A DNA stretch of 64,000 nucleotides from Octopus bimaculoides (taxonomy: Eukaryota): assembly GCF_001194135.2 (NCBI RefSeq), contig NC_068999.1, positions 48,468,594 through 48,532,593 of the forward strand, in the 5' to 3' direction. The position numbers and the translations under genes are program-made. Shown in pieces: positions 26,235 through 52,803 of this stretch. Numbering within the stretch: the first letter of the stretch is position 1; each line of letters opens with the position of its first letter. The notes under the pieces were generated by a model. The model did not search any database. It was not told the origin of the DNA and saw only the letters and a program-made list of their open reading frames with translations.

Positions 26235-28876
26235 NNNNNNNNNNNNNNNNNNNNNNNNNNNNNNNNNNNNNNNNNNNNNNNNNNNNNNNNNNNNNNNNNN
26301 NNNNNNNNNNNNNNNNNNNNNNNNNNNNNNNNNNNNNNNNNNNNNNNNNNNNNNNNNNNNNNNNNNNNNNNNNNNNNNNNNNNNNNNNNNNNNNNNNNNN
26401 NNNNNNNNNNNNNNNNNNNNNNNNNNNNNNNNNNNNNNNNNNNNNNNNNNNNNNNNNNNNNNNNNNNNNNNNNNNNNNNNNNNNNNNNNNNNNNNNNNNN
26501 NNNNNNNNNNNNNNNNNNNNNNNNNNNNNNNNNNNNNNNNNNNNNNNNNNNNNNNNNNNNNNNNNNNNNNNNNNNNNNNNNNNNNNNNNNNNNNNNNNNN
26601 NNNNNNNNNNNNNNNNNNNNNNNNNNNNNNNNNNNNNNNNNNNNNNNNNNNNNNNNNNNNNNNNNNNNNNNNNNNNNNNNNNNNNNNNNNNNNNNNNNNN
26701 NNNNNNNNNNNNNNNNNNNNNNNNNNNNNNNNNNNNNNNNNNNNNNNNNNNNNNNNNNNNNNNNNNTTTTTCAATCTACGTAGGGAAATATGGAAATTAA
26801 GAATATGGTGGGCGGGGAAACAGAAATTTTAATTTCAAATTTTTTATGAAAAACTCTAAAATTGATCCACACTGCATCCCGCTGTCTAAAAGTGAAAACG
26901 AACGGCTGTTTAGTCCGTTCCCGCATGCGTAAATTTATAGTAAAACAGCAAAAGAACCACGGCATGTAAAGCCCTCACTCGATATGCTAAAAATAACAGC
27001 TAAATGTTCGGAGAATTTTTGTGCTTGTGGGTGCGCGCGTGCAACAGTTTCTACAGCTTATCCGAATGAACAGAGAAAGAAGTACACAAAAGAAATCGGC
27101 AAGGTCAGTTGGGGGTGGGGTGACTGTCCTCCAGTTCCACCCTATGAAGTTCCTTAATAGACTCTGTTTGGAGATTTTCCTGTATTAGGAAGAAAACATC
27201 GTCCATGAGTTCATATATTTTGCATACATGGTATGTTTTATTTAATTGTTTTTCACCTCTTCCTTTCTTCCCCCTCATCTTTTTCCACAAATTGTAAACT
27301 GTCTTCTCATCGGATGCTTCAATACTTTAATATTGCTTATTTTATCGACCCCTGGGTAGATAAGCGAAAGTTAAAGACGAGATTTTAACTCAAAACGACG
27401 AAAATATATCACAAGGAATTTAACCCGTCTCTCTCGCAATCTTGTCATTAACCGCCATTGTAATCCTTATGTTAATGGAGCGTGTACAAGTACCACGGAG
27501 TTTGGTCGGGTGGTAAAATGTAAGAGGACGAGTGCTTCTTATATTGAAGGGACGTGCGGCCCATGAAAAGAAAATTGTCAGAGGTAAGTGCTCCATTTCA
27601 AAGATATGATAAATTAAAATTGTAAAGTAAGAGGTTAATAGCCTCAATTTGTAAATTTATGTAAACATTTATAAAAAAGCAATGTTATAGAGAAGCAAAG
27701 TTCGGCGGGCGGCTTCTGTCTTCTCCCATTGATATTATCACGTTCATCATTCATCTCATTTCATTAATGTGTTTGTCCAGCCCGCAGCTACTCCTCTGTG
27801 TACTGCCTTTATGGCAAATAAAATGAAATAAAGTATATCTAAATATGCAACCGTAAACGACCAGCCCTTTCTTTCACCATCTACAACATTCTCAGTAAGT
27901 AGCTTGTACCTCTCCTTAGAGAAGTGTAGGTGAGAGACGGGATTTGATAGTTTTCTGGCAGTTGAGAGTATTGTCTGGTCTGTCTGCTGTACCTAACAAT
28001 ATTCCCTCAGTATTCCTTCCCCATGTTAGGTGATATCAGTGTATGTCAACGGATTACTTGCATTCCTCCGGAGTCATACCAGAAGTCACAGCCCCTCAGG
28101 GATACATGGTAAACTCACCAGCAAGGGGATTAGAATGCAAAACGCTATACGGATTCTGCCAGAACTACCTTTGAGTAGATGATTAACACATACATATCTT
28201 TTCTTTCTTAGATAAGAAATCGGAAAATAAAAATGAAAGCTCCGTCTTATTTGGCACATTGATCTCGTAAGATTAAAATGTTCAAAGAACCAATCCCTAT
28301 AGATAAACAACAGATCAACGGTCGCTTTCTTCGATAAGTATTTCAGTAATTCGATCAAGAAAATTACTCTATCTGCTCATTGAATGGTACTATCATTGTG
28401 ATAAGATTGGTCTTTTGAATTATCGGTACAACTCATCTTTACCTATAATTCAGACTTTCTGCCGTTTCAACCTATTCAATTTCACTCACTATCTGAAGTT
28501 GTTGGGTAGAAAACACTTGCTCAAGATCCCAAACCCGTGCTCTTGTGATTACGAGGCGAATTTTTAAAAATTTAATCATGTGCCATCAACTTGTGTTTAG
28601 TCTTAGCCTCAGGTCAGCTCTGATTGATTATACCTATGATCACAGACATTCCAGCAGTGACTGTCCCGTTTTTTTTTTCCATACATCTAAGCATTTCATT
28701 ATTCAATGTTATATTTCTTTAAAAACAAAAGGAAAACTTGGGGTGTATTTTGGAGAAGATTTGGCTTCTATTTCTAGCAGATCGAGCGACCATATAGAAG
28801 CTCCTTTGTCTCGTAGTTATCTCCTCCTGATCTTCGACGCGACTTTCAATTGTCAAATGAAAATATTGTAGTCAAA

Positions 28877-29617
28877 ATGATGACATCCTTCACACCATCT
28901 AGAAGATCAGAACTTATATATTTTTTCGCGTTTGCTTTCGTATCACTAACATCTCTACATGAAACTGAAGGAGAAAGAATATTACTGAAGGATGTGAAAG
29001 TTATTTCTTTGTACCAAAACCAAATGACTACTGCAAGAAGATTGACACCAGTTCCTCAATTGAAATGTATTGGAGGATCAGCTGGTTGTCAAGCTTTCGT
29101 GCCAAAACAAGTCCATTGCTACAACAAAGGCTTGGATGGCGACAATATCCTATGGGATTGTAAAACAAACATGGATAAAAAATATCGTTTCGGACACCTC
29201 GCTATATCCTGTGAAGGCTTCGATTATTCCGATGATCCTTATATATTAGCTCACTCTTGTGGTCTAGAATATACTATAAATAACGGCGTTGAGAACAATC
29301 ATCGGGAATATGAAGATTCTCGATCAGATCCAGTATTCGATTTCTTCTGTATTATTTTGTTTGTGTTATTAGCTAAAATGATTTACAGTTGGCAACCGAA
29401 TATCTTTTCCACGTCGAAAAATAATAGTTCAAATATAGATAAACAACATACGAATACTCCAAAACCACCGCTCATCGCAGCACCTTCAGCAACGAATACA
29501 GTTCAACCGCCTCTGCAACATTTTCGTAATTTTAGAATTCGCCCCCATCAAATTTTGTCTTGTGTGATCAGACCCACCAAACAAGGCATGAATCGAAACC
29601 CCAGACCTGATGCGTAA
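28877..29617 (+). CDS. SARAF: SARAF/TMEM66-like single-pass membrane protein, intronless, shortened cytosolic tail (246 aa)
   Basis: Signal peptide, then RILLKDVKVISLY...TTARRLTPVPQLKCIGGSAGC...CYNKG.DG...W.CK....YRFG...SCEGFDY.DDPYIL..SCGLEY (six luminal Cys of the SARAF fold), a TM helix and a Pro-rich tail. The ORF track starts at TTG 28850; the first ATG is 28877. AATAAA at 29653. Confidence 0.9.
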   Translation: MMTSFTPSRRSELIYFFAFAFVSLTSLHETEGERILLKDVKVISLYQNQMTTARRLTPVPQLKCIGGSAGCQAFVPKQVHCYNKGLDGDNILWDCKTNMDKKYRFGHLAISCEGFDYSDDPYILAHSCGLEYTINNGVENNHREYEDSRSDPVFDFFCIILFVLLAKMIYSWQPNIFSTSKNNSSNIDKQHTNTPKPPLIAAPSATNTVQPPLQHFRNFRIRPHQILSCVIRPTKQGMNRNPRPDA

Positions 29618-31568
29618 CCAAAGCAATTGATAAACAATCGAACTGCGAGGAAAATAAAAAATGCTTTCGTTTAACTATGAAACTTTGCTATTTTTCCTAT
29701 AGATTTATTTATTTTTTGCTCTATTTTCTCGTTTACCTTGTATCGAATTTTCAAACAAAATAGTTTAGCTATTTTCTTTTTATTCCGTTGTAATATCGTC
29801 TTTATTCATTGAAAAATAACTTTAGTTTGCTTATTATTTTGATATGGACGCCTCGTTCATTTTAATTTCAATCGAAAGTTCAGCGTTGATGTGACAGAAC
29901 AAACCCCTAACTGTTGGTAAGCCCTTATTGGGCGATCCTTCAATATTGGCCTACAGTGTGTCGGTATGAGGAGACGACGTCATTCACTCTCTTTTTCAGC
30001 CTAGCCTCTTTTGTCTATGCCATGAAGGAAAGTTGTATGGGTGAATGATGTCGTGTACCAATACCGAAGGATTGCCCTTTATTGTATTATGGATTGAGTA
30101 ATAGATGCGCTGGTTTATTTTATGCAGAAGGGCAGGTCATTGCTTGTAACTTTGGATGAACGACTATGAATATAAATCTTGTTGAAAGTGGATAAATTTA
30201 AGGGATGAATCTTTCGAACTTTGTACATATAATAGGATAAAAGGAAACAATGGTAGTTTCTGTTTCCAAATTATCCTGGATTGCTAGCGACGGGCATAAT
30301 TACGCGCGCGCGTGCACATACAGGTGTGTCTGAGGTATGGGCAACTGTTTTCGAGAAGCGGCCCGCATGAGACATGGTTCTTCGCGAGGCGGGCCGCATG
30401 TTACCCATGATACATACATACATACATGCGTGTGTATAGATATGTTTGTATGTTTTCTTTAATTGGGTCCTCAACTCTTAACAGGGTCGTCGGGGAGCCG
30501 TCATGATATATCATGCGTGTCTTTAGGAATCTTAGTCGACAGTCGGTAGAGCGTCGACTAGAATGTTTTGCGGTATTCATTTCGCCAGTCGTGAGTTCGA
30601 ATCATGCTACCGTCAACCTTACCTATGATGCATTATAGGTCGATAAATAAAACGCCAGTCAAGTACTGGGGCGGAATCCTGGAATAGTTTTCACCACTTC
30701 ATGGGGAAGGAAAATGGCAATGGATTATAGTTTTTTCTCCCTTCATTTCTGATAGTTTTTCTGTATATCGTACAATGAAAATTATGATTCTGAATGAATT
30801 ATTTTTTCAAAGTAATTTCAATTTTTTAAACATTTCCCCTCTTAACCTGTGTCCTTTTCTTTCTCTGAGGCAGTGATAGCTATTCTAAAACATCTCTCCT
30901 CCTCCTTCTCATCCATCATCTTCTTCACCTCCTCCTCACTCTCATACAGGTTCAAAATGTCCAAGCGAGACTTGAACTCAGAGCGCCGTAACGAATCTCG
31001 CAAAGCATTCTAGCCGACGCTCTGTGATCCCATTGGTTGAAGACCAAAGGATATATATATATATATATATATACATATATTCGTGCAAGGTAGATAATAC
31101 TTTGCACTTCACTCAAACCAATATATAGGTGCGGCTCGCGAGGGTGCCTGACCGTTCCAACGACTCTTTCTTTTTCACTTTATCGACTTAGCCTCAATCA
31201 AAACAATCCTCGCCTATCCTTTTGTCAAGGACTAAGTCGATAAAGTGGAAAGAAAAATAATTTTCTTGTTAATATTTTCTTATTATTTATCAAATTATGT
31301 CTTAAATCTGATCACAGCATCCTAGGAGAGTGAAAGGTGAAGTTAACCTCGGATGTATTTGAACTTAGAACGTAAGGAGTGGGAACAAATAAATACCTCG
31401 TTGTAATTTGTCCGACGCTCTGACGTTTTTGCCACTTCGCTTGATCTCATTTCGCTGATTTATTACATCACTATATTGTCAGCAGTTCCTCACGTTATGT
31501 CCTTTGATAACGATAGCAACGCTAAATCAATACACTAATTTTCGAAGTTTACGTTTAGGGGACTTGAA

Positions 31569-32060
31569 ATGTCTCCAATGAGAACTATCTATTTTGTTTG
31601 TTTCCTAGTTTTGGCTCCTCTACATAAAAATGAAGGGGAGAAAATTTTTTCGGAGGTAGATAGTTCGTTGAATTTTAAACAAGAGGCTGCTGTAAATAAA
31701 TCGTCACAAAATACATGTGCAAATCGTTTCCCAGAATCGGCTGGTAGTAACGATTTCGTTACTCAAACTCCTAAATTTATTAAACAACATCAACATGAGC
31801 AAAACAAGAACCAGCAACATATGGTTGTAAATGCTATATCAGATGAAAATCAGAATAACAAAAAGACTCCCGATAATTCAGAACGCGCTGGCAACAATAT
31901 GAACAAAGTATACGCCATTAAATATAGTAATAATCGGCAGTTGCATTTCAAAAACTTCTTGATCTGTTTTGATTATGCAGTTATATGGCTGTTTTTGTTT
32001 ATTGCCATATATGTCGCATATTCTACTTACACCGAAAGGAATCAGATGTACTTTTTTTAA
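31569..32060 (+). CDS. Uncharacterised 163-aa type I membrane protein, probable divergent tandem paralogue of the adjacent SARAF-like gene
   Basis: ATG-initiated intact ORF with a hydrophobic N-terminus ending LHKNEGEKI (neighbour LHETEGERI), a polar N/Q/K-rich middle, TM FDYAVIWLFLFIAIYVAYS (neighbour FDFFCIILFVLLAKMIYS) and AATAAA 13 nt after the stop (32073). Confidence 0.7.
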   Translation: MSPMRTIYFVCFLVLAPLHKNEGEKIFSEVDSSLNFKQEAAVNKSSQNTCANRFPESAGSNDFVTQTPKFIKQHQHEQNKNQQHMVVNAISDENQNNKKTPDNSERAGNNMNKVYAIKYSNNRQLHFKNFLICFDYAVIWLFLFIAIYVAYSTYTERNQMYFF

Positions 32061-32449
32061 GTCACTGAGAAGAATAAATATTAATCTTGCATCCCGTTGC
32101 AGTTCATCCTTCTTATTTCATCAATAACACAGGCCAACAAAAAGAAAAGAAAAAGGAAAAAGTTTTCTGTTGTCAAAATATTTGAGCCTGAACTAAAAAG
32201 GTATTTTGACACACAAAATCCGAAAATGATATCCGTTTATTACCACCACGTCAGGGTTTTATGATTCTGGATCCATAGAATTTCATTGTTTTTTGTTTGT
32301 TTTTGTTTTTGTTTTTTTTTAATAAAACAGCTTGTGAGGAACAAGGCATAACATACAAACATACATTGAAATTGGTTTTTCTTCAAACCCAGAATGTTTT
32401 CTTAAAATTCTACCGAAAAACTAGTAAAACTCTTAAAATTTCTGCAGAC

Positions 32450-33160
32450 CAATTACATTATTGTCTATGCCTACGAATTTGCGTGTGGAGGATTTTCATG
32501 AGGGCTGGACCTCAGGAAGATCACGAGCCATGTTCCAGCAGTGGTCCGCCATCATTTGCAAGTCATATCTGCCTTCATATGTTCATATAATTCCATGTTC
32601 TGATGGAAACGTTCTTATTGCTTGTCACTTGTGTCACCGAGATTTCCAAGGAATTTAACAAGGTGACTTTGGAGATAGTGCAGCATTATGCTCATATTTG
32701 CTCCCAACTTTTGGGGATTGCTGGTTGCGTTCTTGTTGTCTAGCAAGTAATTTATAAGTATAACAAATGAATTCTATATTTCAATGCAATTCATTAAATT
32801 TACAAAGTTCCCATCTTTCATCAATTTTCTGATTTGAGGCCCATAAAATACTCTAACTTTTATGATTTCACTGCTAAGACCTGAAAATGTCTTGATCCAG
32901 AACTTTAACAAACTGCTTCATAATGCCAAGTTTGATATGAAGAGGAGGTAGGATAATTTTTTCCTGGTTGAGCTAAAGGTTCCCAACCACATAAAAAGAC
33001 CTGGAACCAATGTTTGCTGCAACCATTCTTTGACCACCCAATGTTTTCCCCTGGCTCTGCTCTCCCCACATACATAAAAAGGATGGATATTTGGTATATC
33101 CACTTTGTTGCCTCAGGAGAAAATTGCCCATCTTAAAGTCCACGCATATCATCCACTAAT
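32450..33160 (-). mobile_element. Degenerate DNA-transposon transposase (CMC/Chapaev-3-like; family call tentative)
   Basis: Hand translation gives WMICVDFKMGNFLL.QQSGYTKYP.FLCMW, KIILPPLHIKLGIMKQFVKVL, FYGPQIRKLMKD, LGANMSIMLHYLQSHL..F.GNLGDTSDKQ*ERFHQ and MMADHCW, with stops and frameshifts. Confidence 0.78.
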
Positions 33161-36100
33161 GATTTGTGGTGGGGTTATCTTGAAATCTAGACGAGATGGT
33201 AAACAACATTCTATTTCTGGATTCAGCAAATCAAAAATCTCCCACTTCAAATCCGGTAAAAACGTCCTGACAACAAGATAGCCTGGTCAGTGGCATGGAT
33301 ATGTGAAAGTCGGCTATGATTTCACTTCATAATATTATTATAGCGTTAAAATTTAAGTGAAATCCATTAATAAGTTTGTGTAACGAATATGTATGAAATA
33401 CATTTTTACACAGCAACAATTATTACATCTTGTATTAACAGTGGTTCGCTATCTTTCTGGATTTGAATTATATAAATGTTGCTGGTTGAGGAAAGGGATG
33501 TAACATTTTCTAATTGTATTGTCTTCAATTATGATTCGATTCGCATCATCTAGGATACGTTATAAGAATTATTATACGACTCAAGTACTTGGTACTTTAT
33601 ATTTTGACTTGCCTAGTCGTAGGGACGCCATTACGACATACTGCGATCCTTAGGCCTTTTTAGGCCTGACGGAACCCGTTCTTCTCCAGTTGTGAACCCA
33701 ACCGGTTTCTTTCAGAGAGAAAGGGGAGAGAAAGAGAAAGAAGAAGAGAGAGGGGAGAGAGAGAGAGAGAGAGATGTTCACTTCTGACATATCTAGCACA
33801 AACGAACATTTTTTAAAATATAGCTCTGAGAGTTACTGAATTAGTAGAAGCAGTACACAGCCACACTTTGGCTGTATTCATTTCTAACCTTCTAAAAAAC
33901 TGAGTTCAAATATGACCTCAGTCTATCTTTGCCTTTCATACATTTCAAATTTGGGGACAAAGTCAGCAAATTCGGGGAAGATGGGAAGTCGATTACATCG
34001 ACCCCAGTGTTCAACTGGTACCTGTGTTATCGATCCCGAAAGGATTCTCTCTTATTGTTATAAGTCTAACAGAAAGGCTTTCTGTCCTTCATAATCAGTC
34101 TCATTGCTTTTGTTTCTGCACCCACGACGGCGAACAGCTCCAGAAATGTCATGCGGTCTGGTAGAATCATTAGGGCTTGAGGACTTGAAAATCTATGATG
34201 ACCCATCTTGACCGCATATGGTTTCTCTTTACCTTCAGGCTGACCACTTACCCGTATTGCAGCATTGACCCCTTGCACGATACCGAGCCAGGGTTTTAAT
34301 GTCGTTGTCAATACTCCTGGCTGCCCTCCCTGTTTTGCTCTAACCCTTATACTGTGGCACAAGTCTTTGTATAGCTGTTTAACATACTGATTGCACCTGG
34401 CACTGCTTCGACCTCAGTTTTGAAGAACAAGGTTCAAATCCCCCTATATTCTGCTGCGATTGGCGGAAACAACATTCTTCCATATTTTTTTTCTTTTATT
34501 TGTTTCAGTCCTTAGACTTCGCCCATGCTGGGGCATCGCCATGTGGGATTTTTAGTCGAACGAATCAACCCCGGTGCTTATTTTTTAAGCAGTTCATAGC
34601 AGTTCTTTTGCCGACCCGCTATGTTACGGGAACATAAACACACCACCACCGGTTGTCAAGCGGTGATGAAGTAGACACACGCGCGTCCCTGGCCACATAC
34701 ATACATATAAACAAAATAAAAAATAATATATATATAATATTATGTTTGTTTATGGCCGGTCAAATAGTGACCATTCGTTCCACACCTATAAAGCGCTAAG
34801 CTGTATAGGCAACTCTTCAGACTCAAATGGTCGATGATACATAACGTCTTTCTTTAAATGTAGAAAACGCCAGGGTTACTTGGTAAACAAAAGTACATAT
34901 AAACAATATGGTCGAGCTTGGTTGCCATGGGAGGTACGGGGTTACCTCCCCTACATCACCTTCGCTTGTGATTATATTCTTAAGCTACGTGTGTTATGTC
35001 TTAAAATCCAACATCTCGGATTCGACTGCGGTGGTGTTCTAAGATGCTGTTGTTGCTGCTTTATTCGATATCTGTGGAGTTCGAAGCTTGCAGGATCGGC
35101 TTCGGCTGTGGTGAGGAAAGGGATGTAATATTTTCTAATTGTATTGTCTGAAATACCTCTATCCTGAATCTTGTATTGAGTTGACGAAGTAGCGCCACTG
35201 TAGAGAAGAGCTATGAGTTATCTCCCTTCATTTTGTTAATAAATAAGAGCAGTCTCCATGACGCTAAAGCGTTTTGTCAAAGATAACTGGAGGAAGCGAT
35301 CAATATGGGAGTTTGATCGGCTGGGGTGATCAGGTTACACATGCCAGCCCTTTGAAAACACCACCGCCATCATTGAACCCCTCTTTGCCCATGGGTTAGG
35401 GACCCTTCCAGCAAGGAAAATAGAATGACCAAAAGGGCTCCCGATTCTCTTTGTCCAACCCATGTATTCGTATTCCTTCTAAATTATACTTCTATTTATA
35501 CGAGTACATTCCAATATATGATGAATGATCTCTGTTGTTATTATTAAACGCTTTTGTATTGCTCTGAATTATATTGTATTAGATTCTTGCCTCTTTTATA
35601 GCTCTTGTAGGAAAAATAATGAAGGAATTATCGTGGTTGTTTCCTTTCACCTTGTGTGATGTGAATGACAGTAGATCTTTTCTTTTCTTTCCTCATTTCG
35701 GGCTGTACATCTTAATTCAATTAATAAATGCAACACGGGGAAATAAATAAATAAATACATAAATAAATAAACAAATAAATAGGTTTAAAAAAAAATAGGA
35801 AGAATAGATAAAAGACAAAAGATAACAACAAGAACAAAAAAACAGACCCATCTTTTATCTCACTGCATCACAATTTGCAGGTTGAAGAATTTTTTTTGTT
35901 TGTTTCTTTTTAAATGAGCAAATACAAAGAAATATAATCAATATTCAAGCAATTGTTGTTGTTGTTATTGTTGCATTGTATTTCTTTTACTTGTTTATTT
36001 GTTCTTTTTTTATATTTCAGAATTTTTGTTGGCTTTTTTTTTTTTTTTAATCATTCTTTGGTTTTGCTTAAAAGTTAATTATAATAATCTTTTTTAATTC

Positions 36101-47903: not shown

Positions 47904-48601
47904 TTAAACTTGAGCTTCACAAAGGTTAACATAAAGATCACTATCGTATGACACAGTGGCCGTTGATTCCTTCTCGACACTCGGAGGATCACTCCCATCA
48001 TCCCTACCCACATCCGATCCTTTACTTCTAAACCTCTTCTCACTGCTACGCCGTGATTGGTCTTTACTCGACCGCTCCGATCGATTCGACACAATACTGT
48101 CCGAACCGATCTCATGCAATACACCACACATGCTACTGGTATCCTTTTTTGATCCTTCTTTGCGGCTGTTAAGGAATTCAGATATTTTAGTGATAGCCGA
48201 AACCGGCGATAATTGTTTCAAGTCCAAATGGAAGCCATCTTTCTCCTCGTTTATTCTGGAGAGTATTATTTGTTTTTGTTTGTTTTTCTGTTGAATTAAA
48301 CATTGCAGTTGTGTTTTGTTGCCGTCTTTTTCGGAGCTTTTTAAATGTACAGGACAGACAACATACTGAATGTTTTCCAGTGGTTTGTCCATCATGCCAT
48401 CACCAACATCGATATCCAACAAAGCTACAGCTTCTGACACATTCTGACTAACAGTACTCGGATAACTGTCGATTACTTCTTGGTTACTGGGGTGTCGTTC
48501 GAAGATCGGCATAAAAAACATGCAGAATCCTCCTAGAATCATAGCGGATCCAGCAAAAATATAACCGGCCGATGTAGACTCGTATGATTCATTCAAATAA
48601 A
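47904..48601 (-). CDS. SLC16/MCT-like MFS transporter, terminal exon (last TM plus ~200-aa acidic/Ser-rich tail)
   Basis: tttttcag acceptor at 48603-48602, phase 1. Encodes [33 protein letters not shown]...VNLCEAQV*, in frame with the upstream exon. Confidence 0.85.
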
Positions 48602-49419
48602 CTGAAAAAAAAAAGAAAGAGAAAAATCATATTATATACTTGATAGTCTAATAAATAAATAAATAAACAAACAAACAAAAAATAGACAAATAAATAAATA
48701 AATAAATAAAGGAACTTAATCTTTCGTTGCAAGAGTAAAATTAGAGTTATCTCCCTTGTAACTATCAATTTTTCTCGTGAAAATAAACAGAGATGATAAT
48801 TGTTTTTAACAGCGACTCAATGCCTAATAATTTTGAAGAAGTGGTTTTAACAATGAAATCGCTTTATTGGGTAAGTCGATTACATCGCTCCCAGTGTTTT
48901 ACTGGTACTCAGTTTATCGACCCCGATAGGATGAAAGGCAAAGCCGACCTTGGCAGAATTTGAACGTAAAGACAGACGAAATACCGCTAAGAATTTCGCC
49001 CGGCTTGCTAACGTTTCTGCCAGCTCGCCGCCCTTAATCGATATCTTGATTAAAACAGATAATAGCCCGAATAAATATGGTCACAATTGTTACCAAACTA
49101 AACACCAATGGGCTTTCAACAAGGCTTAGTTTAGCCTTAATCCATCTAAATACAAATTCACTTGTAAAACTGAAAGGATTCAGACTTGTCATTTTATAAA
49201 AGATTTTCTATTAAATGACTTAAATTAGGTTCAAAATAACATTAAAAGTAGTCAAAAGAAACGAATCGACGCCTCAGAAATATTGGCTTTATAAGTTATT
49301 ATCCTCTCAATTATTTTATAATTGAATATTCTTTTGGTGAACAAAATTGAGTGTTGTATGCTGTGTGTATATTCTTTACTAATTTTAATTGCTTAAGTAA
49401 GAATAAAAGTTTGACTTAC

Positions 49420-49801
49420 TAGCTGTAAAAGTTCCAGCCAAAGTGGAAATAGATTGGGCTGCACAGGTAAAACCCCAGGCTCGCTCCATTATTTTCACCT
49501 TAACTAACTGATAGATATACATCTTCAGGCTGTAATAGTAACCTCCACAAGCAATTCCATATCCACAGGCATAAAGGGCATGAACTGTGAGATGATCGGC
49601 CAACTGCAGAAGGACAGTGAGTAAACCGGCAGAAAGAGCGGCTGTTTGACATAGGTGACGCCTCGAGATTAAACACTCTTTACTTTGACGTATAATTACA
49701 TAACCGAAGCCGAAACATCCGGCAACGAAACCCGTGCACAGGTAGATATTCAACAGTAAAAGATTGTGGTCGCTAACGTTGTGTTGGGATGCAGTAAGTA
49801 G
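49420..49801 (-). CDS. SLC16/MCT-like transporter exon (TM8-TM11 region)
   Basis: cttttcag acceptor and A|GTAAGT donor. Encodes LLTASQH...[10 protein letters not shown]...[24 protein letters not shown]...[16 protein letters not shown]. Confidence 0.88.
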
Positions 49802-51307
49802 CTGAAAAGAAAAAAAACGGAAAAAAATATATATAAATATATATTGTATAATAGTAACAGATCAAAAATATTTAAATTCTTTTAAAATTAGGGAAAAATT
49901 AAAAACTTATTCAACGTATGACATCATGACATATCCGATATTGAGTAAACTATGATTACATTAGACTAAAGACTATGACTAGTGTTTTATGTTGTGAAAC
50001 AATAGATGCACATCTGTCGTTTAAATTGCTTTTATTTTTCGTTATATTAGGCAGCGAGCTAACAGAATCATTAGTATTCAGAGCAAAATGCTTAGCGGCA
50101 TTTCGTCCGTCTTTATGTCCTAATTTCAAATGCCGCTGAGGTCGACTTTGCCTTTCATCCATTCGGGATCGATAAAATAAGTATAAGTTGTTCACTGGGT
50201 TGGTGTAAGTGATTTACCTCCACCCCTAAAATTGCTGGCCTTGTGCCAAAATTTGAAATCAATACTTTTCGTTATGTCTCATATTTCTGCATTTCAGTAC
50301 CTTTCTGGTGTCTAGTATGTAGTTGTAGAACATGGACATACAAGGATCTTTAAAACCACATCTTACGACAATGATAAGTGTAAAAACTATCACTATGCTC
50401 GGTAGATTCACCCAATACAATATTGTAAAGATTAGTAATTGAAATTATAATTATGGTTTCAGACTTCGTTGCACAGTTTTCCGAAGTCTTTTAGATTTGT
50501 TTCAGGAAAATGCACAACAGGTCTAAATGTTATTCGTCTAAATTTTATTCAAATGTTTTCTCTTAGGAAGAAATCATCGTTATTGACCAGCAATTGTTAA
50601 CCAAAATCATGCTAAGGTGTTCCCAAAACATTTCTACTGTCGGAGCACATTTTTCCCAGTTTTTGCACCTCACAGGATTGGAATTTCTTTATGCATTCCG
50701 GTTCACGTTTCAATATAATTAAACGGTCTTTCCTTGGTCTTCATCTCTTTTTACCATCTATGTTTTTAGTGACTCATTCATACATAAATACATTTTACAA
50801 AGATAAATTGCACTCAGTTGATTAAACGCAAAACCAGTCCAGTTAATATTAAATATATCAAATAATATAACAAAATATATTTCACGTTCCAGGAACTCAA
50901 TTTGTAATCAGTTGTAGTTTACAAATGAAAATAAGTTTTGATACTTAGTGTGTGACTCTAACACTGTTATAGAAAATGATGATAAATATAAAATGCGCCA
51001 TTACTATATAGATAATTGCATACACTTACTAGGGAAGCTACGTTAGTAAAGAGACCTGAAGCCACAACTGAATGCTTAAACACTATTGCTTATAATAAAA
51101 TTTATGAATGCCCGTAATTTCACTTGAAAGAAAATTTAGTTATTTGCTTGTGTGTGTGATTTAAAAAATACGTACATTTATATTAAGATATTACGATAAT
51201 ACATGATTTTATAAATTTACTTATACACAACCTATTCGACTTGTTAATGGATGTGAGATGGGTTTTGAAGCAAGCAAACACATTTTGTATATTCATAAAG
51301 AACTCAC

Positions 51308-51578
51308 CAGTAATATAAATGGAACGTGGATACCAAGACCAACGAGAGCCACAATGATTAACATCATTAGTAGAGCACGCATTCGTAATGCTTGGAAGTC
51401 AAAATAAGGAGGCTTTTGTGCCTCTCGATCACGTCTGGTCTTCATTTGGTTTTTGATGTGTAAAAGCATCTTCCGACGAGGATGATATAAAGAAGCAGAT
51501 CGGTATAGAAACCCAGCAAATATTGTCAGTACTTGCATACCAGCTATGCTTTGTAATGCACGGGTCCATGTCAATTGC
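51308..51578 (-). CDS. SLC16/MCT-like transporter exon (TM6, central loop, TM7)
   Basis: ttgcag acceptor and CTG|GTGAGT donor. Encodes [13 protein letters not shown]...[19 protein letters not shown]...KPPYFDF...GIHVPFILL. Confidence 0.88.
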
Positions 51579-52469
51579 CTGCAAATAAACCAATCAAAAG
51601 TCTTGAGAAACTGAGCAACAGTAACAAAAAGCAATAAAATCAAATGTTCCTTTTTTTCTGGAAGACACAACTTTATCATTTTGTTGTGTCTAGGGAGAGT
51701 CATCATGCCCATATAATTAACACACACACACTGGTTCAATTCCACTTATTTATTAATAGATTTAATTTAATAAATGAGTGTAACTGACCCAGTATGTGTG
51801 TTAAATATATTGGTGTAATAACTCTTCCTAGACGCAACAAAATATGTTTCAAAACACGAATTCACATAAAGAATCTTGCAAACCAGATACAAAAACGAAG
51901 TACAACTTTATCATCTAATGGCGTCCAATTTGAAACGGATCTTCGAACCCTTGTACCAGCAAATCAATATCCAAATCAATAAACTGGACTATTTGCTGAT
52001 GTGTTCGTAGTTCTTGTTTCACCAGCAACCTTGTTGAAGTGTTTGTGCCAACATCAACTTCACGAGCAGGCTGTTCCGTCAATCGAATTGACTGGAACAC
52101 TCATCATCGTAACCGACGGACTGTCCAGCCCCTATATTTTGTCTCACAACTTTTATGCAAACACGGATCTTACTATTTGGTTATCCTGCAGGATACATAC
52201 CTGTCTTACGTCTACGTCCACCTCAGAGGTATTAGTAACAGTTGTAGACGTGATGAAATCGTTGTGATGATAATTGAAACCGTTCTCAGATAAAGTTCAC
52301 TCAACGCACATCATCTCACTCATCTTACAACAAAGAGAGAAGATGCAGTAAAAAAGAAAAAAGAGAGAGGAAAAGAAAGAAAAAAGAAAAAATGGAGAAA
52401 AGAAATGAAGGAGAGAAAGCGGAAGGGAATTGTTTACTTCTACACTTCACTACTCGTATACATACTAAC

Positions 52470-52803
52470 CTTATGAGAAGCCGGAATAGGACGGACATGA
52501 TGGTTGCTCCTACACCTATTGCTGTCATGGCTATCAATTCAGCAATTTCTCGTCGCCGGCAGAAATATCGACCGAGCATGATATTGGCCGTTGTAGACGT
52601 AATTCCGCACCCGACGGAAAACACTAGACTGTGACTGATGTACATATGCTGCATTTGGTTTGAAAAGGCCATAAAGAGGCAACCAAGAGACGAAACCATG
52701 CCCCCAATAATGGCACACATGCGAGGAGATTTCCGTCGGCAGATCACTGTGAAAATGGGGCATACGAGCAACGTCACGCTAAGACCAGCGCTTCCGACGC
52801 GAG
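52470..52803 (-). CDS. SLC16/MCT-like transporter exon (TM2-TM5); upstream exon(s) not located
   Basis: atttcag acceptor and AG|GTTAGT donor. Encodes [34 protein letters not shown]...SVGCG...[14 protein letters not shown]..., with the MCT 'YFxKRRxxA' signature after TM4. Confidence 0.9.

What the first reader, a model, noticed from the sequence alone, without database searches (positions are those of the whole stretch)
31569..32060. Orphan membrane protein that keeps the SARAF signal peptide and TM helix but replaces the luminal domain
Seen: an intact intronless 163-aa ORF 2 kb downstream of the SARAF-like gene on the same strand. It matches the neighbour at both membrane-targeting ends. The N-terminus is IYFVCF..LHKNEGEKI versus IYFFAF..LHETEGERI (DNA CTACATAAAAATGAAGGGGAGAAAAT versus CTACATGAAACTGAAGGAGAAAGAAT), and the TM is FDYAVIWLFLFIAIYVAYS versus FDFFCIILFVLLAKMIYS. 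The six-Cys SARAF luminal domain is absent, replaced by ~100 aa of N/Q/K/S-rich sequence, and the tail is only ~10 aa ending in YFF. Known: SARAF is an ER single-pass regulator of STIM/Orai store-operated Ca2+ entry, and C-terminal FF motifs act as COPII export signals in ERGIC-53/p24 proteins. Inference: a tandem duplicate that neofunctionalised, for example as a secretory-pathway or surface protein or a TM-only modulator. This would be a lineage-specific two-gene module.
Basis: partly seen in the sequence, partly recalled or inferred. Interest (0 to 1): 0.75.

Follow-up and report, generated by a model that had tools for sequence, protein, structure and literature searches.

The report
Unannotated octopus orphan membrane-protein gene
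A 163-codon reading frame next to an octopus SARAF-like gene is very probably a real, unannotated, octopus-restricted gene for a small single-pass membrane protein, likely born from a copy of its neighbour; it is a tidy example of how orphan genes arise, not a new kind of system.

Summary
It is single-copy DNA. It has its own unspliced transcript in RNA assemblies of two octopus taxa, with very high depth in some samples. It is intact and free of indels in three octopus taxa.

Substitutions show coding constraint: 34 changes, 18 at third positions, 20 nonsynonymous against 14 synonymous (p=0.002). The constraint lies in residues 63-163 (5 nonsynonymous, 10 synonymous; p=4e-5). These cover the N/Q-rich middle, the juxtamembrane region, the TM helix and the YFF tail. 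Residues 1-62 evolve almost neutrally.

Resemblance to the neighbour holds only for the N-terminus. A profile of the neighbour's three orthologues scores 11.2 bits, matched by 5 of 5000 segment-preserving shuffles, and weak colinear traces run to SAG..FV. The TM resemblance alone is generic (p about 0.1). The ORF fails every SARAF-defining feature: no Pfam match, no six cysteines, no cytosolic STIM-binding tail. It has no homologue in 5.8 billion proteins.

Best reading: a lineage-restricted type I membrane protein derived from a tandem copy of the SARAF-like gene, of unknown function and not a SARAF-type regulator. Interest is moderate to low.

The parts
31569..32060 (+). ORF163 coding sequence (163 codons plus TAA)
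   Evidence: ORF listed and sequence read. Intact, same length and indel-free in O. sinensis (L001:14881-15372) and in organism B RNA contigs. Overall dN/dS is 0.26-0.46 in the three pairwise comparisons.
31569..31622 (+). N-terminal signal-peptide-like segment (residues 1-18, MSPMRTIYFVCFLVLAPL)
   Evidence: Hydropathy maximum at the N-terminus and a helix in the AF2 model. Aligns to the neighbour's IYFFAFAFVSLTSL. No dedicated signal-peptide predictor was available.
31623..31766 (+). Residues 19-66: region weakly colinear with the start of the SARAF-like luminal domain (LHKNEGEKI ... SAGSNDFV); fast evolving
   Evidence: HMM and hhalign alignments. In residues 1-62 there are 15 nonsynonymous and 4 synonymous changes, not distinguishable from neutral.
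31755..31955 (+). Residues 63-129: N/Q/K-rich middle and juxtamembrane segment, strongly constrained, no detectable homologue
   Evidence: Residues 63-96 have 0 amino-acid changes against 6 synonymous changes in three taxa. No hit in Pfam, PDB, 5.8 billion proteins or 1.84 billion representatives. The AF2 model is disordered at residues 38-100 and helical from residue 104.
31956..32030 (+). Residues 130-154: transmembrane helix FLICFDYAVIWLFLFIAIYVAYSTY
   Evidence: Kyte-Doolittle 19-residue maximum of 2.31 at residues 130-148. AF2 pLDDT is 89-92 here. One conservative change (I132V) and three synonymous changes across three taxa.
32031..32057 (+). Residues 155-163: short tail TERNQMYFF with C-terminal di-phenylalanine
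   Evidence: Read from the sequence. Invariant in three taxa. Its action as a motif is inferred only.
31224..32435 (+). Approximate unspliced transcript unit carrying ORF163 (outer limits of separate RNA contigs; in run X4 a contig spans 31053-32933)
   Evidence: RNA contigs: X25 31224-32000, X19 31252-32026, X15 31346-32174, and X34 (organism B) 31471-32435 at depth 150.5. X4 spans 31053-32933 at depth 1348. No splice-like joints outside simple repeats. The + strand is inferred from A>G-only RNA-DNA differences.
32073..32078 (+). AATAAA hexamer 13 nt after the stop codon (a second one lies at 32321-32326)
   Evidence: Read from the sequence. Use as a poly(A) signal was not tested; several contigs run past the first hexamer.
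28877..29617 (+). Neighbouring intronless SARAF-like gene, the presumed parent of ORF163
   Evidence: Pfam PF06682 at E=1.4e-51 and PDB 6O2U at E=9e-39. O. sinensis orthologue P0002 is 90% identical. The mRNA of another species (L002) maps colinearly to 28626-29912.

Best explanation
ORF163 is a real but unannotated protein-coding gene, so far seen only in Octopus.

The protein. It encodes a small type I single-pass membrane protein made of four parts: an N-terminal signal peptide; an exposed (luminal or extracellular) polar segment of about 110 residues, largely disordered and rich in N, Q and K; one aromatic-rich transmembrane helix; and a 9-residue cytosolic tail ending in YFF.

Origin. It most likely arose as a tandem copy of the adjacent intronless SARAF-like gene. 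It keeps that gene's targeting logic (signal peptide first, membrane anchor last, similar spacing). It has lost the disulfide-bonded SARAF beta-sandwich and any long cytosolic region.

Where selection acts. Selection now acts on the C-terminal two thirds: the N/Q-rich stretch, the juxtamembrane helix, the TM helix and the tail. The signal peptide and the first 45 or so mature residues drift.

Inferred mode of action. The protein is inserted co-translationally into the ER and probably leaves it, since it has a C-terminal FF and no KKxx or KDEL signal. It would act through its membrane-proximal and membrane-embedded part, for example as a small accessory subunit or partner of another membrane protein. 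It is co-expressed with the SARAF-like neighbour in the same samples. It cannot act like SARAF on STIM1, because it lacks both SARAF functional regions.

Shown: the ORF, transcription, three-taxon conservation, the pattern of coding constraint, single-copy status, and absence of SARAF-defining features.

Inferred: translation, topology, trafficking, duplication origin, and any partner.
For: Gene reality:
- The ORF is intact, 163 codons and indel-free in the window, in O. sinensis (L001) and in organism B, while its flanks carry indels.
- There are 34 substitutions, distributed 7/9/18 by codon position (p=0.014).
- 20 are nonsynonymous and 14 synonymous, against a neutral expectation of 81% nonsynonymous (p=0.0024).
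- Residues 63-163 have 5 nonsynonymous and 10 synonymous changes (p=3.9e-5), with omega 0.085.

Transcription:
- Separate RNA contigs cover the ORF in 12 RNA or RNA-like assemblies of two taxa that were laid (8 of organism A, 4 of organism B); the index places it in several more. Depth reaches 1348 (X4), 150 (X34) and 154 (X28).
- The intergenic stretch has depth of about 4 in X34, so this is its own transcript.
- DNA runs show single-copy depth equal to the neighbouring gene and no variants.
- RNA-DNA differences in unique sequence are all A>G on the + strand.

Architecture: hydropathy and the AF2 model, which has helix 3-37, disorder 38-100 and helix 104-162 with pLDDT about 90 at the TM.

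Origin:
- Same strand and 1.95 kb downstream of the neighbour. Order is conserved in O. sinensis.
- The similarity is specific to the neighbour's clade, and landmarks are colinear.
- No ORF163-like sequence lies downstream of the other two O. sinensis SARAF genes.

Not a SARAF; the SARAF domain roles come from PMC8391525.
Against: - No direct evidence of translation.
- The NCBI annotation of O. sinensis has no protein product there. No gene caller in a 15-billion-protein collection produced this protein.
- The ORF as a whole is no better conserved at the nucleotide level (5.1% divergence) than its flanks (4.9-6.7%). The case for coding therefore rests on the pattern of substitutions, not their number.
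- An ORF would survive 25 random substitutions 35% of the time.
- Splitting the ORF into 1-62 and 63-163 was done after seeing the data.
- Homology to the neighbour is short and weak. It is absent against a family-wide SARAF profile (0.2 bits), and the TM match is not significant.
- The run kinds are guessed by the tool ('RNA?'), and contigs carry no strand.
- The AF2 model was made from a single sequence (mean pLDDT 60).
Confidence: 0.6

Rival explanations
1. An orphan gene only partly related, or unrelated, to SARAF. In this reading the constrained part (residues 63-163) arose de novo or from unrelated sequence. Only a short 5' fragment (signal-peptide coding region) was copied from, or converted by, the neighbour, or the resemblance is coincidental. 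It is still a real small membrane protein.
For: - Significant similarity is confined to about 23-60 N-terminal residues.
- Nothing in residues 67-163 matches the neighbour above chance or anything else.
- The similar part evolves almost neutrally, while the dissimilar part is the constrained one.
Against: - Overall architecture and spacing are colinear with the neighbour (39 against 41 and 77 against 86 residues between landmarks).
- The SAGxxxFV remnant sits at the expected place.
- Both TM segments begin FD[FY] and end YS.
- Tandem position on the same strand fits a full duplication.
Confidence: 0.22
2. A transcribed relic. ORF163 would be a decayed SARAF-like duplicate, or part of a conserved non-coding or readthrough transcript, whose open frame persists by chance and is not translated into a functional protein.
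For: - Flanking transcript sequence is as conserved as the ORF.
- In run X4 contigs run continuously from 27931 to 32933 across both genes, so some readthrough exists.
- There is no annotation or predicted protein anywhere.
- ORF survival by chance is about 35% for the A-S distance.
- Short uORFs precede the ATG.
Against: - Third-position excess and nonsynonymous deficit (p=0.014 and p=0.002), and p=4e-5 in residues 63-163.
- No indels in 489 nt across three taxa, while the flanks have them.
- A163-codon ATG-ORF is among the five longest in 64 kb.
- Expression is separate from the neighbour, with intergenic depth of about 4 against 150-290.
- A at position -3 of the start codon.
Confidence: 0.12
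3. A tail-anchored or hairpin topology instead of type I. The N-terminal hydrophobic stretch would not be a cleaved signal peptide, so the polar region faces the cytosol and the C-terminal TM is inserted post-translationally.
For: - The TM ends only 9 residues from the C-terminus, which is typical of tail-anchored proteins (established knowledge).
- The N-terminal 62 residues are under little constraint.
- No signal-peptide predictor could be run.
Against: - The N-terminal hydrophobic core is kept in all three taxa (only R5S and V10I).
- It aligns with the signal peptide of a bona fide type I protein.
Confidence: 0.06

Closest known systems
SARAF / TMEM66 family (Pfam PF06682; human luminal domain structures 6O2U, 6O2V, 6O2W)
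   Same: Single-pass layout with an N-terminal signal peptide and one TM helix. The N-terminal 20-60 residues weakly resemble the octopus SARAF-like neighbour. Genomic adjacency to a family member.
   Different: - No PF06682 match.
- None of the six conserved luminal cysteines; no beta-sandwich is predicted.
- The cytosolic part is 9 residues, instead of about 140 residues carrying the conserved PGFW...GFGGTxRR region.
- SARAF's inhibition of CRAC channels depends on its C-terminal SOAR-binding region, not on the luminal domain (PMC8391525).
[quoted passage not shown]
   Same: - Same strand, intronless, and co-expressed in the same RNA samples.
- Shares IYF..F..L..LHK.EGE[KR]I, SAGxxxFV and a TM helix that starts FD[FY].
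- Similar dN/dS (0.23 against 0.26).
- Both lack the canonical SARAF cytosolic tail.
   Different: The neighbour retains the full SARAF luminal fold signature (E=1.4e-51) and a 75-residue divergent tail. ORF163 retains neither.
Taxonomically restricted (orphan) genes formed by duplication and divergence beyond recognition
   Same: A parent gene lies next door. Only the targeting segments are still recognisable. There are no homologues outside the lineage. Expression is high in some samples and absent in others.
   Different: Here the parent can still be named, and the new, unrecognisable part is the one under the strongest purifying selection.
C-terminal di-phenylalanine ER-export signals (ERGIC-53 KKFF, p24 proteins; from my own knowledge)
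   Same: A type I membrane protein with a very short cytosolic tail ending in FF, invariant in three taxa.
   Different: There is no di-lysine retrieval signal and no lectin or GOLD domain. The motif's function here is untested, and the whole tail is conserved, not just the FF.

Membership tests
SARAF (PF06682) | Sequence match to the SARAF family profile | tested here: not met
   hmmscan at E up to 1 gives no SARAF hit for ORF163, while the neighbour scores 176.6 bits. A 13-sequence family HMM gives 0.2 bits, within shuffles.
SARAF (PF06682) | Luminal 10-stranded beta-sandwich held by three disulfides (six conserved Cys) (PMC8391525) | tested here: not met
   The only Cys are at positions 11, 50 and 133. 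The AF2 single-sequence model shows helix, disorder, helix and no strands (low-confidence model).
SARAF (PF06682) | Cytosolic C-terminal region that binds STIM1 SOAR and mediates inhibition (conserved PGFW...GFGGTxRR in alignment A2) | tested here: not met
   Only 9 residues follow the TM helix. The conserved tail columns seen have no counterpart.
SARAF (PF06682) | Type I single-pass layout: N-terminal signal peptide plus one TM helix | tested here: met
   Hydrophobic segments at residues 7-18 and 130-154; AF2 helices. No SignalP or DeepTMHMM was available, so cleavage and orientation are inferred.
SARAF (PF06682) | Regulation of store-operated Ca2+ entry | not testable with these tools
   Needs Ca2+ imaging or electrophysiology.
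Tandem duplicate of the neighbouring SARAF-like gene | Sequence similarity to the neighbour beyond chance, colinear, and specific to that paralogue | tested here: met
   Clade HMM scores of 11.2 and 12.5 bits, reached by 1 of 3000 and 5 of 5000 shuffles. hhalign E=5.7e-4. The signal is confined to the N-terminus; the TM alone is not significant. Support is moderate, not proof.
Functional protein-coding gene | Conserved intact ORF with a substitution pattern of purifying selection, and transcription | tested here: met
   Three taxa, no indels, dN/dS 0.26-0.46, nonsynonymous deficit p=0.002. RNA contigs in two taxa.
Functional protein-coding gene | Evidence of translation (ribosome footprints, peptides) | not testable with these tools
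   No Ribo-seq or proteomics data were accessible.
COPII FF-motif cargo (ERGIC-53 / p24 type) | Two aromatic or hydrophobic residues at the extreme C-terminus of a short cytosolic tail | tested here: met
   The tail ...NQMYFF is invariant in three taxa. This shows sequence presence only; Sec24 binding and ER export are not testable here.

The most novel reading that the evidence does not exclude
ORF163 and the SARAF-like neighbour would form an octopus-specific, co-regulated two-gene module. The orphan's constrained juxtamembrane and TM part would pair with the neighbour, or with another SARAF or STIM-type ER protein. Its fast-evolving distal N-terminus (omega near or above 1 in residues 19-62) would be an exposed, rapidly diversifying surface, as in reproductive or recognition proteins. 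That would make it a new class of small accessory subunit born from a Ca2+-regulator gene.
Probability: 0.08. Interest if true: 0.6.

Novelty: new variant of a known kind. Interest (0 to 1): 0.35.

Why it matters
- It adds a conserved, apparently highly expressed but unannotated small membrane protein to the octopus gene set. It is absent from the NCBI O. sinensis protein annotation at this locus and from a 15-billion-protein collection.
- It gives an unusually legible example of orphan-gene birth. The parent is still next door, the targeting signals are still traceable, and the unrecognisable part is the one under selection.
- It shows that Octopus carries at least three intronless SARAF genes plus this derivative on one chromosome. 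One SARAF paralogue lacks the STIM-binding tail. This is relevant to anyone inferring SOCE regulation in cephalopods from annotation names.
- It does not open a long-standing question.

Tried and rejected
- Homologue searches for ORF163 found nothing: the word-indexed search of 5.8 billion proteins, full HMMER against 1.84 billion representatives, Pfam (only sub-threshold SPOC and DUF2417) and PDB.
- Exact look-up of ORF163 and of the neighbour's protein in assembled contigs found nothing on record.
- tblastn of both proteins against the whole window found no further copies. There is no ORF163-like sequence near the two other O. sinensis SARAF genes.
- A frame-shifted origin of the middle region is rejected: six-frame tblastn shows only the in-frame N-terminal match.
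- The global MAFFT DNA alignment of the two loci is uninformative (AT-rich, 67% column identity). It was replaced by local alignment with shuffles.
- The global protein alignment is not significant.
- The non-colinear 'HFKNFLI / HFRNFRI' match (E=0.49) was judged to be chance.
- Rfam found no family in 27000-34500.
- Splicing between the two genes is rejected: every joint reported in the 12 RNA or RNA-like assemblies laid across the locus, or every joint shown for them, anchors in simple repeats at 30410-30437, 31050-31080, 32286-32322 or 33750-33777.
- A repeat or TE origin is rejected: ORF depth equals single-copy neighbours in four DNA runs.
- Raw-read RNA runs X39 and X40 have almost no coverage, so they gave no strand or splice information.
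- Fold search was not run, because the model is low-confidence and mostly disordered.

Full report
**What the window is.** It is a draft eukaryotic scaffold with eleven N gaps. The ORF at 28877..29617 is a SARAF-family protein (Pfam PF06682, E=1.4e-51; PDB 6O2U, E=9e-39). [quoted passage not shown] The window therefore comes from an Octopus species, called 'organism A' by the run index.

**The observation.**
- The ORF is exactly as described: ATG at 31569, TAA at 32058-32060, 163 codons, + strand.
- It lies 1951 nt downstream of the SARAF-like stop codon.
- It is one of only five ATG-ORFs of 150 aa or more in the 64 kb window.
- Its cysteines are at positions 11, 50 and 133 only.
- Residues 25-129 are rich in N, K, S and Q.
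- A hydrophobic peak (Kyte-Doolittle 2.31) lies at residues 130-148.
- Nine residues (TERNQMYFF) follow the membrane segment.

**Is the resemblance to the neighbour more than chance?** For the N-terminus, yes.
- BLASTP gives 11/23 identities, E=0.002.
- hhalign aligns ORF residues 1-67 to SARAF residues 10-78 with E=0.0014, passing through LHxxEGExI and SAGxxxFV.
- Three-species profiles of each gene give E=5.7e-4.
- An HMM built only from the neighbour's three orthologues scores ORF163 at 11.2 bits and its O. sinensis orthologue at 12.5 bits. That is reached by 1 of 3000 plain shuffles.
- The score is also reached by only 5 of 5000 shuffles that keep the hydrophobic segments in place. It is therefore not generic signal-peptide hydrophobicity.
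- With a family-wide SARAF HMM the signal vanishes (0.2 bits). This is what a copy of this particular paralogue would show.
- At DNA level the best local alignment is in frame and at the equivalent position, but only modestly unusual (10 of 500 dinucleotide shuffles).

The TM similarity on its own is not significant (E=0.13; 492 of 5000 shuffles).

Landmarks are colinear. LH to SAG is 39 against 41 residues, and SAG to FD is 77 against 86. 'Replacement' of the luminal domain is therefore not demonstrated; divergence in place fits equally well or better.

**Is it a gene?**

*Copy number.* Four DNA runs give the ORF the same depth as the neighbouring gene (for example 12.3 against 15.1, and 51.7 against 52.4) and show no variants. 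It is unique sequence, not a repeat.

*Transcription in organism A.*
- RNA assemblies contain separate contigs over the ORF: X15 31346-32174, X19 31252-32026, X14 31336-31949, X25 31224-32000. Depths are 6-13, about a tenth of the SARAF-like gene.
- In run X4 a contig spanning 31053-32933 has depth 1348, next to one spanning 27931-31079 with depth 1102. Flanking contigs have depths of 6.5 and 70.
- Two other RNA runs (raw reads) have almost no signal for either gene, so expression is sample-specific.

*Transcription in organism B.*
- In this second taxon the ORF contig reaches depth 150 (X34) and 154 (X28), against 291 for SARAF-like in X34.
- The intergenic stretch has depth of about 4.
- The ORF therefore lies on its own unspliced transcript and is co-expressed with the neighbour.

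*Splicing and strand.*
- All reported joints sit in simple repeats (AT at 31051-31080, T-rich at 32286-32320). There is no evidence of splicing between the two genes.
- The mRNA of the SARAF-like gene in another species (L002) maps to 28626-29912 only.
- Contigs carry no strand. However, every RNA-DNA difference in unique sequence of organism A is A>G on the + strand, and DNA runs show none. This is the signature of ADAR editing of + strand RNA.

*Caveat.* The run kinds are the tool's guesses ('RNA?'). The depth contrasts and the A>G pattern support them.

**Conservation.**
- The O. sinensis locus (L001) keeps the same gene order: PACRG on the opposite strand, then SARAF-like, then ORF163.
- Its ORF163 orthologue (L001:14881-15372) has 163 codons and no indel. 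It is 92% identical in protein, with 25 nucleotide differences split 4/6/15 by codon position and dN/dS 0.26. For comparison the SARAF-like gene has dN/dS 0.23.
- Organism B is a third taxon. Its changes differ from those of O. sinensis. Its ORF has 12 differences from the window and no indel.
- Over the three taxa there are at least 34 substitutions, split 7/9/18 by codon position (p=0.014). Twenty are nonsynonymous and 14 synonymous, against a neutral expectation of 81% nonsynonymous (p=0.0024).
- The constraint is uneven:

| Residues | Nonsynonymous | Synonymous | Result |
|---|---|---|---|
| 1-62 | 15 | 4 | Indistinguishable from neutral |
| 63-163 | 5 | 10 | p=3.9e-5; omega 0.085 between the window and O. 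sinensis |

- A Fisher test between the two parts gives p=0.013. The split was chosen after seeing the data.
- Residues 63-96 (FVTQTPKFIKQHQHEQNKNQQHMVVNAISDENQN) have no amino-acid change but six synonymous changes.
- No ATG lies between codons 4 and 85. Translation from the annotated start is therefore needed to explain the constraint on codons 63-84.

*Caveats.*
- The ORF's total nucleotide divergence (5.1%) equals that of its flanks (4.9-6.7%). Other intergenic blocks are 10-17% diverged. The whole transcript is thus conserved, and the coding argument rests on the substitution pattern.
- Chance ORF survival is 35% for 25 substitutions.

**What the protein looks like.**
- It has an N-terminal hydrophobic core (IYFVCFLVLAPL) that aligns with the neighbour's signal peptide.
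- The polar region carries one N-glycosylation sequon (N43).
- AF2 from a single sequence predicts helix 3-37, disorder 38-100 and a long helix 104-162, with pLDDT about 90 over the TM (mean pLDDT 60, so only the coarse picture is usable).
- The tail ends in YFF and is invariant.

From established knowledge of type I proteins, this reads as follows: a cleaved signal peptide, an exposed disordered N-terminal part, a constrained juxtamembrane helix and TM helix, and a minimal cytosolic tail. The terminal FF could serve ER export, as in ERGIC-53. No signal-peptide or topology predictor was available, so a tail-anchored topology remains a minor rival.

**Comparison with SARAF.** The review PMC8391525 states two things. 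First, the SARAF luminal domain is a 10-stranded beta-sandwich fixed by three disulfides. [quoted passage not shown] ORF163 has neither, so it is not a SARAF family member by any defining feature. At most it is a SARAF-derived gene.

The neighbour itself lacks the conserved cytosolic tail (PGFW...GFGGTxRR) that is present in the canonical octopus SARAF P0005 and in vertebrate, nematode and flatworm SARAFs. All three O. sinensis SARAF genes are intronless. They lie at 41.4, 45.06 and 46.45 Mb of one chromosome. Only the 46.45 Mb copy has an ORF163-like gene behind it.

**Verdict.**

| Claim | My estimate |
|---|---|
| ORF163 is a real protein-coding gene | about 0.85 |
| At least its 5' part derives from the adjacent SARAF-like gene | about 0.7 |
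| Type I secretory-pathway membrane protein, if coding | about 0.75 |

Its function is unknown. The distribution of constraint points to the membrane-proximal and membrane-embedded part as the working end. This suggests a small accessory membrane protein rather than a SOCE regulator of the SARAF type. It is a clean but ordinary case of a lineage-restricted gene born by duplication and divergence, and it is currently unannotated.

Noticed in passing
window 28877-29617; alignment A2: The SARAF-like neighbour keeps the luminal SARAF fold signature. It has replaced the conserved cytosolic tail (PGFW...GFGGTxRR) with an unrelated 75-residue tail that is conserved in three octopus orthologues. By the SARAF literature it should not be able to bind STIM1 SOAR in the usual way.
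   Followed up: partly
L001, L007, L008 (O. sinensis CM016877.1 at 46.45, 45.06 and 41.41 Mb): All three O. sinensis SARAF genes are single-exon ORFs on the same chromosome, 1.4-5 Mb apart. Vertebrate SARAF is multi-exon (my own knowledge), so the octopus family may descend from a retrocopy.
   Followed up: partly
window 29376-31774: RNA-DNA differences in organism A RNA contigs are exclusively A>G on the + strand. Examples are 29376 (inside the SARAF-like CDS, full depth in X15, X19 and X25), a cluster at 30684-30714, and 31182/31190. A further site at 31774 would recode K69R in ORF163 (one contig, depth 6). DNA runs show none of them. This looks like ADAR editing, including hyper-editing of the intergenic or readthrough RNA.
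   Followed up: partly
window 27931-32933: In run X4 two abutting contigs (27931-31079 at depth 1102; 31053-32933 at depth 1348) cover both genes and the spacer without a break. In other runs the spacer is nearly empty. This may be readthrough or a long isoform in the high-expressing sample. The contig also starts about 900 nt upstream of the SARAF-like ATG.
   Followed up: no
window 32291-33155: Sequence downstream of the ORF stays 93-94% identical to O. sinensis, well above the 83-90% of other intergenic blocks. One block (32810-33030) is inverted relative to O. sinensis (L001:16561-16340). It may be a long conserved 3' UTR or another element. Part of it (32739-33200) has raised DNA depth, so it is partly repetitive.
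   Followed up: no
window 47904-52777, minus strand: Several long minus-strand ORFs (47904-48596, 49385-49753, 51293-51745, 52325-52777) look like exons of a multi-pass membrane transporter. One gives a weak MFS_1 match (E=0.0095, below the cut-off).
   Followed up: partly
L001:1-6446 (minus strand), upstream of the SARAF-like gene in O. sinensis: The upstream neighbour in O. sinensis is a PACRG (ParcG) gene on the opposite strand.
   Followed up: no
window 31354-31408 and 31497-31538: Two short upstream ORFs (ATG at 31354 and at 31497) lie in the presumed 5' leader of the ORF163 transcript. The main ATG has A at position -3.
   Followed up: no
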